64,000 nucleotides of DNA, from positions 22,816,001 through 22,880,000 of the forward strand of contig OZ116707.1 of NCBI GenBank assembly GCA_964199315.1, in the 5' to 3' direction. The stretch is from Orbicella franksi. Its lineage: Eukaryota. The notes below the pieces were generated by a model. It was given only the letters and a program-made list of their open reading frames with translations, was not told the DNA's origin and ran no database searches. The first letter of the stretch is position 1; every line of letters begins with the position of its first letter. The translations under genes were made by a program, and so were the position numbers. This document shows, in pieces, positions 840-63,717 of this stretch.

Positions 840-1077
840 AATCGCAAAGTTTCTTTCGTATCTCCACGGCAACGGGTTGGAGTTCCTTAAATGACGCAGA
901 TATAAAGACGTTCTCTTGGCTCGATGCAATTTCCTTCAACTCTGCTACATCACCTCCCTTGCCAACTCCAACAGCATATACTGCAACTCCTTTGTTCTTT
1001 ACTCCTTGAGAGGCTACTGATAGTTCGGTGTAGGGCTTAGATGTTGTTTGCTTTCCATCGGTTATTACAATCAAGAC
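840..1077 (-). CDS. Exon 93: unit A VWA-b C-half
   Basis: 238 nt; ends in phase 1 at GTAAGT, so the gene continues past base 1. Confidence 0.88.

Positions 1078-63717: not shown

What the first reader, a model, noticed from the sequence alone, without database searches (positions are those of the whole stretch)
840..63717. A >7,000-aa mosaic of 49 thyroglobulin-1 domains, 16 VWA, 4 follistatin-Kazal and a WAP: candidate giant polyvalent protease-inhibitor matrix scaffold
Seen: 93 in-frame exons (about 21,141 nt) with no start or stop exon inside 64 kb, so the real protein is larger still. Established: TY domains include the thyropins (sea-anemone equistatin has 3 TY domains and inhibits papain-like cysteine proteases and cathepsin D); Kazal and WAP are serine-protease-inhibitor folds; VWA domains bind matrix and self-assemble; vertebrate thyroglobulin has only about 10-11 type-1 repeats. 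Inference: three inhibitor-type folds strung on VWA anchors and Pro/Thr hinges suggest an extracellular layer (mucus, mesoglea, skeletal matrix, adhesive or egg coat) that is structural and protects against proteases. I recognise no named gene with this architecture.
Basis: partly seen in the sequence, partly recalled or inferred. Interest (0 to 1): 0.9.

Follow-up and report, generated by a model that had tools for sequence, protein, structure and literature searches.

The report
Giant thyroglobulin-repeat matrix gene of coral
This stretch of a coral genome is the middle of one very large, expressed gene for a probably secreted protein built from 50 thyroglobulin-type, 16 VWA, 4 follistatin/Kazal and 1 WAP modules; a sea anemone carries the same gene with the first third of these modules in the same order, and related proteins are catalogued in the sea-anemone body matrix, but nobody has tested what it does.

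Summary
On the minus strand, 840-63717 carries 94 GT-AG exons (21,402 nt, 7,133 codons, no stop). They encode 50 TY, 16 VWA (two exons each), 4 follistatin/Kazal and 1 WAP domain, plus eight 15-aa Pro/Thr hinges. The N gap lies in an intron.

Spliced RNA joins TY exons to WAP to the first tail VWA, so these blocks share one transcript.

The gene is old and constrained. TY paralogues are at most 52% identical, yet 48 of 50 keep six cysteines. The tail units have dN/dS of 0.14-0.28. A sea-anemone (Actinostola) locus matches the first 1,684 residues domain by domain. Porites evermanni has a 6,838-aa gene model next to an orthologous VWA tail.

The architecture is therefore not unknown. It belongs to an anthozoan family that is poorly annotated ("Equistatin", "thyroglobulin-like", unnamed product) and catalogued in Nematostella mesoglea as NvThyr. 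An extracellular matrix role is well supported by relatives. Protease inhibition is plausible, because the anemone orthologue starts with WAP-Kazal-Kunitz-WAP-WAP, but it is untested.

Caveats: both gene ends lie outside the window, tail units 1 and 2 are identical over 3.5 kb so their copy number is uncertain, and the "largest TY array" claim cannot be secured.

The scan had earlier notes on parts of this stretch (VWA MIDAS loss, an intronic transposon).

The parts
62941..63717 (-). TY1-TY2 (exons 63520-63717 and 62941-63144). This is the 5'-most part of the gene in the window, and the gene continues upstream of 64000.
   Evidence: Own HMM, Pfam PF00086, phase 1-1 exons
60660..62814 (-). VWA01-VWA02, two exons each; MIDAS degenerate
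55879..60036 (-). TY3-TY10, eight single-exon TY domains. They are collinear with Actinostola L001 49102-58870.
54606..55649 (-). VWA03 (DGSGQ, MIDAS incomplete). It matches the Actinostola VWA at L001 59822-61142.
34348..54501 (-). TY11-TY42, 32 single-exon TY domains. TY23 (47009-47224) carries the unique LPGF.VPP motif.
45666..45849 (.). Assembly gap inside the intron between TY24 (46232-46447) and TY25 (45335-45559), with a (ctga)n microsatellite on one side
26906..33804 (-). VWA04-VWA08, five consecutive VWA domains, all lacking a complete MIDAS
21030..26525 (-). TY43-TY50. The junctions 24048|23839, 22667|22455 and 21233|21030 are seen in RNA.
20712..20903 (-). WAP four-disulfide-core exon, spliced to TY50 upstream and to the first tail VWA downstream
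   Evidence: Pfam PF00095, E 1e-8; RNA junctions 20903|21030 and 20076|20712
16192..20076 (-). Tail unit 4: VWA-a (19730-20076 + 18195-18435), PT hinge 17772-17819, FS/Kazal 17473-17682, VWA-b (16899-17233 + 16192-16429, MIDAS intact)
9502..14917 (-). Tail unit 3: PT hinge 14873-14917, VWA-a (12737-13083 + 12315-12555), PT hinge 10873-10920, FS/Kazal 10573-10782, VWA-b (9966-10300 + 9502-9739). A transposon remnant lies in the intron at about 11124-12272.
5417..9350 (-). Tail unit 2: PT hinge 9306-9350, VWA-a (8020-8366 + 7111-7351), PT hinge 6806-6853, FS/Kazal 6506-6715, VWA-b (5881-6215 + 5417-5654)
840..4399 (-). Tail unit 1: PT hinge 4355-4399, VWA-a (3443-3789 + 2534-2774), PT hinge 2229-2276, FS/Kazal 1929-2138, VWA-b (1304-1638 + 840-1077). 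Positions 1-3489 are identical to 4578-8066. The gene continues past the window start.

Best explanation
The window is an internal 62.9-kb piece of one expressed giant gene, conserved across hexacorals. At least 94 exons and 7,133 residues lie in the window, and both gene ends lie outside it.

It encodes a disulfide-rich extracellular protein of the anthozoan 'thyroglobulin-repeat protein' family. Secretion is inferred from the domain types; no signal peptide is in the window.

Domain order: TY2-VWA2-TY8-VWA-TY32-VWA5-TY8-WAP-[VWA-PT-FS/Kazal-VWA-PT]x4. The domains are packed bead to bead with almost no linkers.

Most likely mode of action (inferred, not shown): a matrix-anchored multivalent array.
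- The VWA modules tether or assemble the chain in mesoglea or another secreted layer. Only the four 'VWA-b' copies of the tail keep a metal-binding MIDAS.
- The TY modules (thyropin fold), together with WAP and FS/Kazal, bind and probably inhibit proteases locally. The orthologue's N-terminal head adds Kunitz and more WAP modules.
- Because the order of individual TY domains is kept between sea anemone and coral, the domains are probably not interchangeable spacers; each may have its own partner.
For: Gene reality:
- 21.4 kb of exons without a stop, all GT-AG, regular phases.
- Spliced reads and contigs join 18435|19730, 20076|20712, 20903|21030, 21233|22455 and 22667|23839. In run X23 exon depth is 2-4 and intron depth is 0.
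- The same RNA libraries hold the 5' and 3' stretches at similar shares.

Constraint:
- TY paralogues are at most 52% identical (mean 34%), yet 48 of 50 keep six cysteines.
- Tail units have dN/dS of 0.14-0.28.

Conservation:
- 20 collinear HSPs link model residues 2-1684 to Actinostola L001 34348-71363 at 46% mean identity. The best-hit order is T03, T04, T06-T10, VWA, T11, T13-T16.
- Porites has a 6,838-aa gene model followed by six VWAs that are 55-62% identical to VWA-a.

Matrix location of relatives:
- NvThyr-1/2/3 are core-matrisome glycoproteins quantified in mesoglea, and TY repeat proteins are listed among the inhibitors enriched in adults (PMC12549020).
- TY and VWA domains are common among uncharacterised proteins of anemone mucus, nematocyst and tissue proteomes (PMC11857728).
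- Agrin-like TY/FOLN-Kazal/WAP proteins occur in the octocoral skeleton matrix (PMC7853314).

Inhibitor reading:
- The TY profile matches the p41 thyropin fragment (1ICF, E 1e-18) and saxiphilin.
- The anemone orthologue's head is WAP-Kazal-Kunitz-WAP-WAP.
- Paralogues combine TY with Kunitz, WAP or Kazal.
- Equistatin, with three TY domains, is an established inhibitor of papain-like proteases and cathepsin D (cited in PMC6722582).
Against: - No signal peptide, start or stop lies in the window, so secretion and full length are inferred.
- RNA junctions were tested on only 6 kb of the 63 kb.
- No biochemical data exist for any family member.
- Many TY proteins (nidogen, SMOC, IGFBP, Trop2/EpCAM) are binders, not inhibitors, and no sequence rule separates the two.
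- The Kazal-like modules are closest to agrin and follistatin FS domains and lack the usual G-x-D-G-x-T-Y-x-N stretch (CTSDDVQDRSEC). The position aligned to P1 is Asp (my reading).
- 12 of 16 VWAs have lost the MIDAS.
- Run X21 shows no expression.
- Tail units 1 and 2 are identical over 3,489 bp, so one unit may be an assembly duplicate.
Confidence: 0.6

Rival explanations
1. It is a purely structural or adhesive matrix scaffold. The TY, FS and WAP modules serve as rigid disulfide-bonded spacers or ligand-binding modules, as in nidogen, SMOC/testican and agrin. The VWAs drive assembly, as in collagen VI and matrilins. There is no protease inhibition.
For: - FS/Kazal modules are closest to agrin (E 4e-12) and follistatin.
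- 12 of 16 VWAs are MIDAS-less.
- The TY profile also matches nidogen-2-type arrays, IGFBPs and Trop2/EpCAM.
- NvThyr proteins are filed as ECM glycoproteins.
- Domains are packed without linkers.
Against: - TY arrays recur together with bona fide inhibitor folds (Kunitz, WAP, Kazal) in the orthologue's head and in paralogues.
- TY similarity to the p41 thyropin.
- Conservation of the order of individual domains is more than a spacer would need.
Confidence: 0.3
2. The window holds several adjacent shorter genes, or one locus used mainly through extensive cassette-exon skipping, rather than one 7,000-residue product. All the modules are symmetric (phase 1-1), so being in frame does not prove a single product.
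For: - Phase symmetry of all modules.
- Database gene models of relatives are short or split: 1,307 aa in Actinostola, 840 aa in Porites.
- Fish thyroglobulin-like genes have many isoforms.
- Only 6 kb was tested with reads.
Against: - RNA joins the three block types at the most likely boundary, with no skipping junctions and no intergenic depth pattern.
- The largest intron is 1.8 kb and the median is 380 nt.
- The short database models skip exons that are plainly present in the DNA.
- Porites has a 6,838-aa model.
- Collinearity across 1,684 residues with the anemone locus.
Confidence: 0.1
3. It is a polyprotein precursor that is cut into small equistatin-like thyropins and other inhibitors, as LEKTI/SPINK5 is cut by furin.
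For: - Equistatin-like peptides are found in anemone mucus, and the matching transcripts lack signal peptides (PMC6722582).
- Databases label relatives 'Equistatin'.
Against: - Only 10 R-x-K/R-R sites occur in 7,133 residues. They are not placed periodically between TY domains, and most lie inside the VWA tail.
- Inter-domain linkers are very short.
Confidence: 0.06
4. Part of the tail is an assembly artefact. Units 1 and 2 are one unit written twice, so the true counts would be 14 VWA and 3 FS/Kazal in this stretch.
For: Positions 1-3489 are identical to 4578-8066, introns included, and identity is 99.6% up to 3861.
Against: - After 3861 the two copies diverge (85% identity, different structure) and are joined by unique sequence.
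- Units 3 and 4 show that real, older duplications of the same unit exist, with dS of 0.12-0.36.
- Gene conversion or a very recent duplication would look the same.
Confidence: 0.3

Closest known systems
Nematostella 'Thyroglobin repeat proteins' NvThyr-1, -2, -3 (NV2.14419, NV2.14040, NV2.19319; PMC12549020)
   Same: Anthozoan proteins rich in TY repeats. Their best Swiss-Prot hits are WFIKKN2 or equistatin. They are classed as core-matrisome ECM glycoproteins and were quantified in isolated mesoglea.
   Different: Their sequences could not be fetched here, so I do not know which one, if any, is the orthologue. They are catalogued only, with no functional work and no description of a 50-TY/16-VWA architecture.
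Actinostola sp. gene QZH41_008038 (P0019) and Porites evermanni 6,838-aa unnamed product plus P0197
   Same: Orthologous loci. The anemone locus is collinear domain by domain with model residues 2-1684. The Porites tail VWAs are 55-62% identical to VWA-a.
   Different: The annotated products are truncated or split: 1,307 aa against at least 23 TY and 5 VWA in the DNA, and 6,838 + 840 aa in Porites. The anemone copy shows a WAP-Kazal-Kunitz-WAP-WAP head that lies outside the coral window. No Kazal was detected in the Porites tail.
'Equistatin' [Stylophora pistillata] / uncharacterized protein [Montipora foliosa] / 'thyroglobulin isoform X2' [Nematostella], about 2,650 aa
   Same: A secreted TY array (25-27 TY) interrupted by one VWA and by WAP, with Kunitz. 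It uses the same domain vocabulary and is conserved across corals.
   Different: It is a paralogue, about 32% identical. It is a third of the size, with one VWA instead of 16, no FS/Kazal tail, and Ig domains at the C-terminus.
Equistatin of Actinia equina and other thyropins (p41 invariant-chain fragment, saxiphilin TY domains, tick Ir-thyropin)
   Same: The TY type-1 fold with six cysteines and the QC...CWCV motifs. The profile matches p41 at E 1e-18.
   Different: Thyropins have 1-3 TY domains and measured inhibition of papain-like proteases or cathepsin D. Here there are 50 domains and no activity data.
WFIKKN1/2, papilin, agrin, SMOC/testican
   Same: Extracellular mosaics that mix inhibitor-type folds (WAP, FS/Kazal, Kunitz, TY) and act in the matrix. 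The FS modules here are most similar to those of agrin. SMOC and testican combine FS with TY (own knowledge).
   Different: None has a TY array of this size or VWA arrays. The defining parts of those families (NTR, ADAMTS-like cassette, LamG, EC domain) are not seen in the window.
Vertebrate thyroglobulin, fish 'thyroglobulin-like' (26 TY), nidogen-2 with expanded TY arrays
   Same: Long tandem TY arrays encoded by symmetric exons.
   Different: Thyroglobulin has a cholinesterase-like domain and about 11 TY domains. Nidogen has NIDO/G2F/LDL-YWTD parts. Identity is only 30-37%, so the relation is at the level of the domain, not the gene.

Membership tests
Thyroglobulin type-1 (TY) domain, Pfam PF00086 | Profile match above the gathering score; six cysteines; QC and CWCV-type motifs | tested here: met
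   50 of 50 segments match PF00086 (best E 1e-21). 48 of 50 have six Cys. C10, C27, Q37, C47 and C66 are invariant.
Thyropins (functional TY inhibitors, MEROPS I31) | Measured tight-binding inhibition of papain-like cysteine proteases or cathepsin D | not testable with these tools
   Only sequence similarity to p41 (E 1e-18), saxiphilin and a tick thyropin. No sequence rule separates inhibitory from non-inhibitory TY domains.
VWA domain, Pfam PF00092 | Profile match over the Rossmann-like fold | tested here: met
   30 of 32 half-exons match PF00092. The N-half and C-half cover profile positions 1-106 and 104-170.
Metal-dependent ligand-binding VWA (integrin I-domain type) | Complete MIDAS: D-x-S-x-S, Thr, Asp | tested here: not met
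   Intact only in the four VWA-b copies (DSSGS...T...TDG). The other 12 have lost one or more residues, e.g. GSSPR, GSSGA, DYAT.
Kazal-type serine protease inhibitor (Pfam PF07648/PF00050) | Profile match above the gathering score | tested here: met
   Kazal_2 at 28.1 bits against a cut-off of 22.8. Kazal_1 is below its cut-off.
Kazal-type serine protease inhibitor (functional) | Canonical reactive-site loop and the conserved G-x-D-G-x-T-Y-x-N-x-C core of active inhibitors | tested here: inconclusive
   The core reads CTSDDVQDRSEC, and the loop reads C-P-D-T-V-S-P-V-C. The best solved relatives are the FS domains of agrin (E 4e-12) and follistatin. Small Kazal inhibitors score only E 0.02-0.4.
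WAP four-disulfide core, Pfam PF00095 | Profile match above the gathering score; eight cysteines | tested here: met
   35.7 bits against a cut-off of 20.8. Eight Cys are read in the exon 20712-20903. There was no hit in the PDB by sequence.
Vertebrate thyroglobulin | C-terminal cholinesterase-like domain plus type-2 and type-3 repeats | tested here: not met
   All 94 exons are accounted for by TY, VWA, FS/Kazal, WAP and PT hinges. Vertebrate thyroglobulins in the hit list carry PF00135. The gene ends lie outside the window and were not seen.
WFIKKN | WAP-FS-Ig-Kunitz-Kunitz-NTR order | tested here: not met
   The window has no Ig, Kunitz or NTR. The anemone head has WAP-Kazal-Kunitz-WAP-WAP but is followed by VWA/TY arrays.
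Orthologue of the Actinostola and Porites giant TY/VWA genes | Collinear, position-specific best matches that exceed within-gene paralogue identity | tested here: met
   20 collinear HSPs at 46% mean identity (up to 64%), and 14 of 20 are top hits for their interval. Paralogue identity peaks at 52%. Porites tail VWAs are 55-62% identical.
NvThyr orthogroup (N0.HOG0000800) of the Nematostella matrisome | Sequence orthology to NV2.14419, NV2.14040 or NV2.19319 | not testable with these tools
   The sequences are not retrievable here. Only the names, classes and best hits come from the supplement.

The most novel reading that the evidence does not exclude
This would be the largest thyroglobulin-type-1 array described: at least 50 domains in a protein well above 7,000 residues. 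The order of individual domains has been kept since sea anemones and stony corals diverged. That implies each TY domain has its own target, so the protein would act as a matrix-immobilised 'library' of distinct protease inhibitors or ligand traps, shaping protease activity in coral mesoglea, mucus or the calcifying space.
Probability: 0.2. Interest if true: 0.65.

Novelty: new member of a known kind. Interest (0 to 1): 0.45.

Why it matters
Giant modular matrix proteins are badly represented in cnidarian annotations. Here the anemone orthologue is annotated at 1,307 aa although its DNA holds at least 23 TY and 5 VWA domains, and the Porites orthologue is split in two. Proteomic and expression studies therefore see only fragments labelled 'Equistatin' or 'thyroglobulin-like'.

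Three results make this a tractable candidate for studying how corals control protease activity in mesoglea, mucus or skeleton-forming space, which matters for wound repair, symbiosis, disease and calcification:
- the fragments belong to one expressed gene of more than 7,000 residues;
- the order of its domains is conserved across hexacorals;
- the orthologue's head carries WAP, Kazal and Kunitz modules.

It is an extension of a catalogued family, not a new kind of system.

Tried and rejected
1. TY-profile search of 1.84 billion representative proteins. The most TY-rich hit has 26 TY and nothing exceeds 40% identity to the model. However, 26-TY coral proteins found later (P0212-P0214) and the 6,838-aa Porites product were not listed. 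The library is therefore not exhaustive, and I dropped the claim that 50 TY is unprecedented.
2. Length-permissive search with the 5,095-aa crinoid protein P0059, region 4300-5095. It returned only itself because the word index is too insensitive.
3. Exact look-up of P0196: not on record.
4. Walking further along the Actinostola contig. No other fetched protein maps to it.
5. The first gene-finder run with a low exon penalty over-called 141 exons, so I replaced it.
6. Reading the Stylophora 'Equistatin' and Nematostella 'thyroglobulin X2' as orthologues. Rejected: about 32% identity and a different architecture, so they are paralogues.
7. Mucin-like reading. Rejected: linkers are very short and PT stretches are only about 15 aa.
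8. Pseudogene array. Rejected: no stops, cysteines kept, dN/dS below 0.3, and the RNA is spliced.
9. Rfam scan of the window: no hits. Pfam on nine intronic ORFs: nothing except a HIRAN fragment.
10. PDB sequence search with the WAP exon: no hits.

Full report
**What is there**

The window has 40% G+C and one N run at 45666-45849. All domain-like open segments lie on the minus strand.

HMMs built from the window's own domains were run over all six frames. They find 50 complete thyroglobulin type-1 (TY) domains, each inside its own stop-free segment. They also find 16 VWA N-halves, 16 VWA C-halves, 4 Kazal-like segments and 1 WAP, and nothing on the plus strand.

Pfam agrees:
- Representatives of each type score above the gathering cut-offs.
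- All 50 TY segments match PF00086.
- 30 of the 32 VWA half-exons match PF00092.

**Gene model**

TY exons have a phase-1 acceptor close to the first cysteine and a CAG|GTAAG-type phase-1 donor after the last. Each VWA is split into a phase 1-0 exon and a phase 0-1 exon.

A small dynamic-programming gene finder was trained on these sites and on the codon usage of the domains. It gives 91-97 exons depending on the exon penalty, always spanning 840-63717. After correction with RNA junctions and with homologous exon lengths:
- The model has 94 GT-AG exons, 21,402 nt and 7,133 codons without a stop.
- Before the last small corrections, the median intron was 380 nt and the largest 1,789 nt.

The TY count is 50 rather than 49.

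Domain order from N to C:

TY2-VWA2-TY8-VWA-TY32-VWA5-TY8-WAP-[VWA-a, PT hinge, FS/Kazal, VWA-b, PT hinge]x4

Domains abut one another. The only low-complexity parts are eight Pro/Thr exons of 45-48 nt in the tail. There is no hydrophobic segment and no regular set of dibasic sites.

**The gap**

The N run lies in the intron between TY exons 46232-46447 and 45335-45559, beside a (ctga)n microsatellite. Both flanking exons are complete phase 1-1 modules, and no truncated domain touches the gap. The reading frame therefore does not depend on the gap. An extra exon hidden in a longer real gap cannot be excluded.

**One gene?**

Every module is symmetric, so being in frame proves little. I therefore laid RNA on 18101-24100, where the TY block passes through WAP into the tail and where two of the longest introns lie.

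- Reads (X23) and contigs (X1, X4) show junctions with GT..AG ends on the minus strand: 18435|19730, 20076|20712, 20903|21030, 21233|22455 and 22667|23839. The last exon continues upstream from 24049.
- One contig (X1, 773 nt) joins the VWA-N exon, WAP and a TY exon.
- Another contig (X4, 2,214 nt) runs from the VWA exon through WAP and three TY exons and then 412 nt further upstream. It retains intron 20077-20711.
- In X23, exons have depth 2-4 and introns 0. X21 shows no expression.
- The same RNA libraries hold a 5' stretch (50000-56000) and a 3' stretch (20600-26600) at similar shares. This is weak support, because DNA may be present in those libraries.

**Age and constraint**

- TY paralogues are at most 52% identical (mean 34%), yet 48 of 50 keep six cysteines.
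- The four tail units are younger. Units 1 and 2 are identical for 3,489 bp and 99.6% identical up to 3861, then diverge. Units 1, 3 and 4 differ by dS 0.12-0.36, with dN/dS 0.14-0.28.
- Units 1 and 2 may be a very recent duplication, a gene-conversion tract or an assembly effect.

**Functional motifs**

- Only the four VWA-b domains keep a full MIDAS (DSSGS...T...TDG). The other twelve have lost it. This agrees with earlier notes of this scan.
- The Kazal-like modules include an N-terminal FOLN-like part. By sequence they are closest to the follistatin-like domains of agrin (E 4e-12) and follistatin, and only weakly similar to small Kazal inhibitors.
- The TY profile is closest to thyroglobulin, saxiphilin and the p41 thyropin fragment.

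**Relatives**

The genome is a coral.

*Representative-protein search.* A TY-profile search of 1.84 billion representative proteins gave at most 26 TY per protein: fish thyroglobulin-like proteins, nidogen-2, frog proteins with transferrin domains (one labelled saxiphilin-like), hemichordate 'mucin-2-like' proteins and a 5,095-aa crinoid protein. Nothing was more than 40% identical. That library is not exhaustive, because coral 26-TY proteins found later were missing from it.

*Sea anemone (Actinostola).* The one TY+VWA hit was P0019, a 1,307-aa hypothetical protein of the sea anemone Actinostola. Its gene spans 52.6 kb.
- A six-frame scan of the locus shows 23 TY, 5 VWA and 1 Kazal on one strand.
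- The best matches of its TY exons run in the same order as in the coral gene: T01, (T02), VWA, VWA, T03, T04..., T06-T10, VWA, T11..., T13-T16.
- A chain of 20 collinear HSPs covers model residues 2-1684 at 46% mean identity.
- Upstream of the collinear part, the anemone gene carries WAP, Kazal, Kunitz, WAP, WAP, VWA, TY6, VWA and TY.

*Porites evermanni.* A gene model of 6,838 residues ends just before P0197 (840 aa, VWAx3). Together they hold six VWAs that are 55-62% identical to VWA-a.

*Paralogues.* 'Equistatin' [Stylophora], an uncharacterized Montipora foliosa protein and 'thyroglobulin isoform X2' [Nematostella] form a separate family of about 2,650 aa: signal peptide, WAP, TY17, VWA, WAP, TY7, with Kunitz and Ig. 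It is about 32% identical to the model.

**Literature**

- No paper found describes a giant TY array in cnidarians.
- The Nematostella matrisome study lists NvThyr-1/2/3 as core-matrisome glycoproteins measured in mesoglea. It counts TY repeat proteins among the inhibitors enriched in adults (PMC12549020).
- The Actinia fragacea proteome reports TY and VWA among the commonest domains of uncharacterised proteins. One of its peptides, ILGLPGFSVPPAAFVPVCK from A. tenebrosa LOC116307005, matches 11 of 19 residues of a motif found only in TY23 of this gene (PMC11857728). This is a lead, not proof.
- The Corallium rubrum skeletome contains agrin-like proteins built of FOLN/Kazal, TY, WAP and LDLa modules (PMC7853314).
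- Equistatin's three TY domains inhibit papain-like proteases and cathepsin D (cited in PMC6722582).

**Verdict**

The 'one giant extracellular protein' reading is well supported. The 'polyvalent protease inhibitor' reading is reasonable but untested.

The claim that nothing like it is known is too strong. It is a very large member of an anthozoan TY-repeat matrix family that is catalogued but poorly annotated and functionally unstudied. Its notable feature is that its domain order is conserved between sea anemone and coral.

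Noticed in passing
window 19290-19400: An intronic element of about 80-100 nt folds into a hairpin (-32.9 kcal/mol, z -2.35). It has RNA depth in the thousands, loose ends on both sides and 'opposite strand' joints. 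It is probably a dispersed inverted-repeat (MITE-like) element that is also transcribed elsewhere. No Rfam match.
   Followed up: partly
window 22700-23700 (also 1-300 and 4578-4877, 62% alike): An intronic repeat with very high summed contig depth in RNA libraries (up to about 4,700) and many variant letters, so it is a multi-copy element. It has no Pfam match on the ORFs tried.
   Followed up: partly
window 11646-11846 (-): A HIRAN-domain fragment (Pfam E 1e-5) lies inside the intron of tail unit 3.
   Followed up: partly
window 20077-20711: The intron between the first tail VWA exon and WAP is retained in a poly(A) RNA contig (X4, record 11) but spliced out in another library (X1, record 3).
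   Followed up: no
window 18101-24100, runs X21 and X23: Two poly(A) RNA data sets with the same species label differ completely. Exon depth is 2-4 in X23 and zero in X21, so expression is specific to tissue, stage or condition.
   Followed up: no
L001 (Actinostola JAUJYZ010000702.1) 8739-71377: The deposited gene model (1,307 aa) uses only a fraction of the TY/VWA/WAP/Kazal/Kunitz exons present on that strand. The next model (452 aa) is the continuation of the same gene.
   Followed up: yes
P0198-P0201 (Pocillopora, Stylophora, Oculina, Logan): A separate conserved coral family of about 1,300-1,400 aa. It has a signal peptide, WAP and TY modules interleaved (W T4 W T2 W W T4), and a C-terminal basic tail that suggests membrane anchoring. 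It is labelled 'thyroglobulin-like'.
   Followed up: no
P0303 (Oculina patagonica, 3,907 aa): Another giant coral array, made almost only of WAP and Kazal modules (about 20 WAP and 19 Kazal by my HMMs) with Kunitz and Ig. Corals seem to have several very large inhibitor-domain arrays.
   Followed up: no
window 45600-45665: A (ctga)n microsatellite runs directly up to the assembly gap and probably caused it.
   Followed up: no
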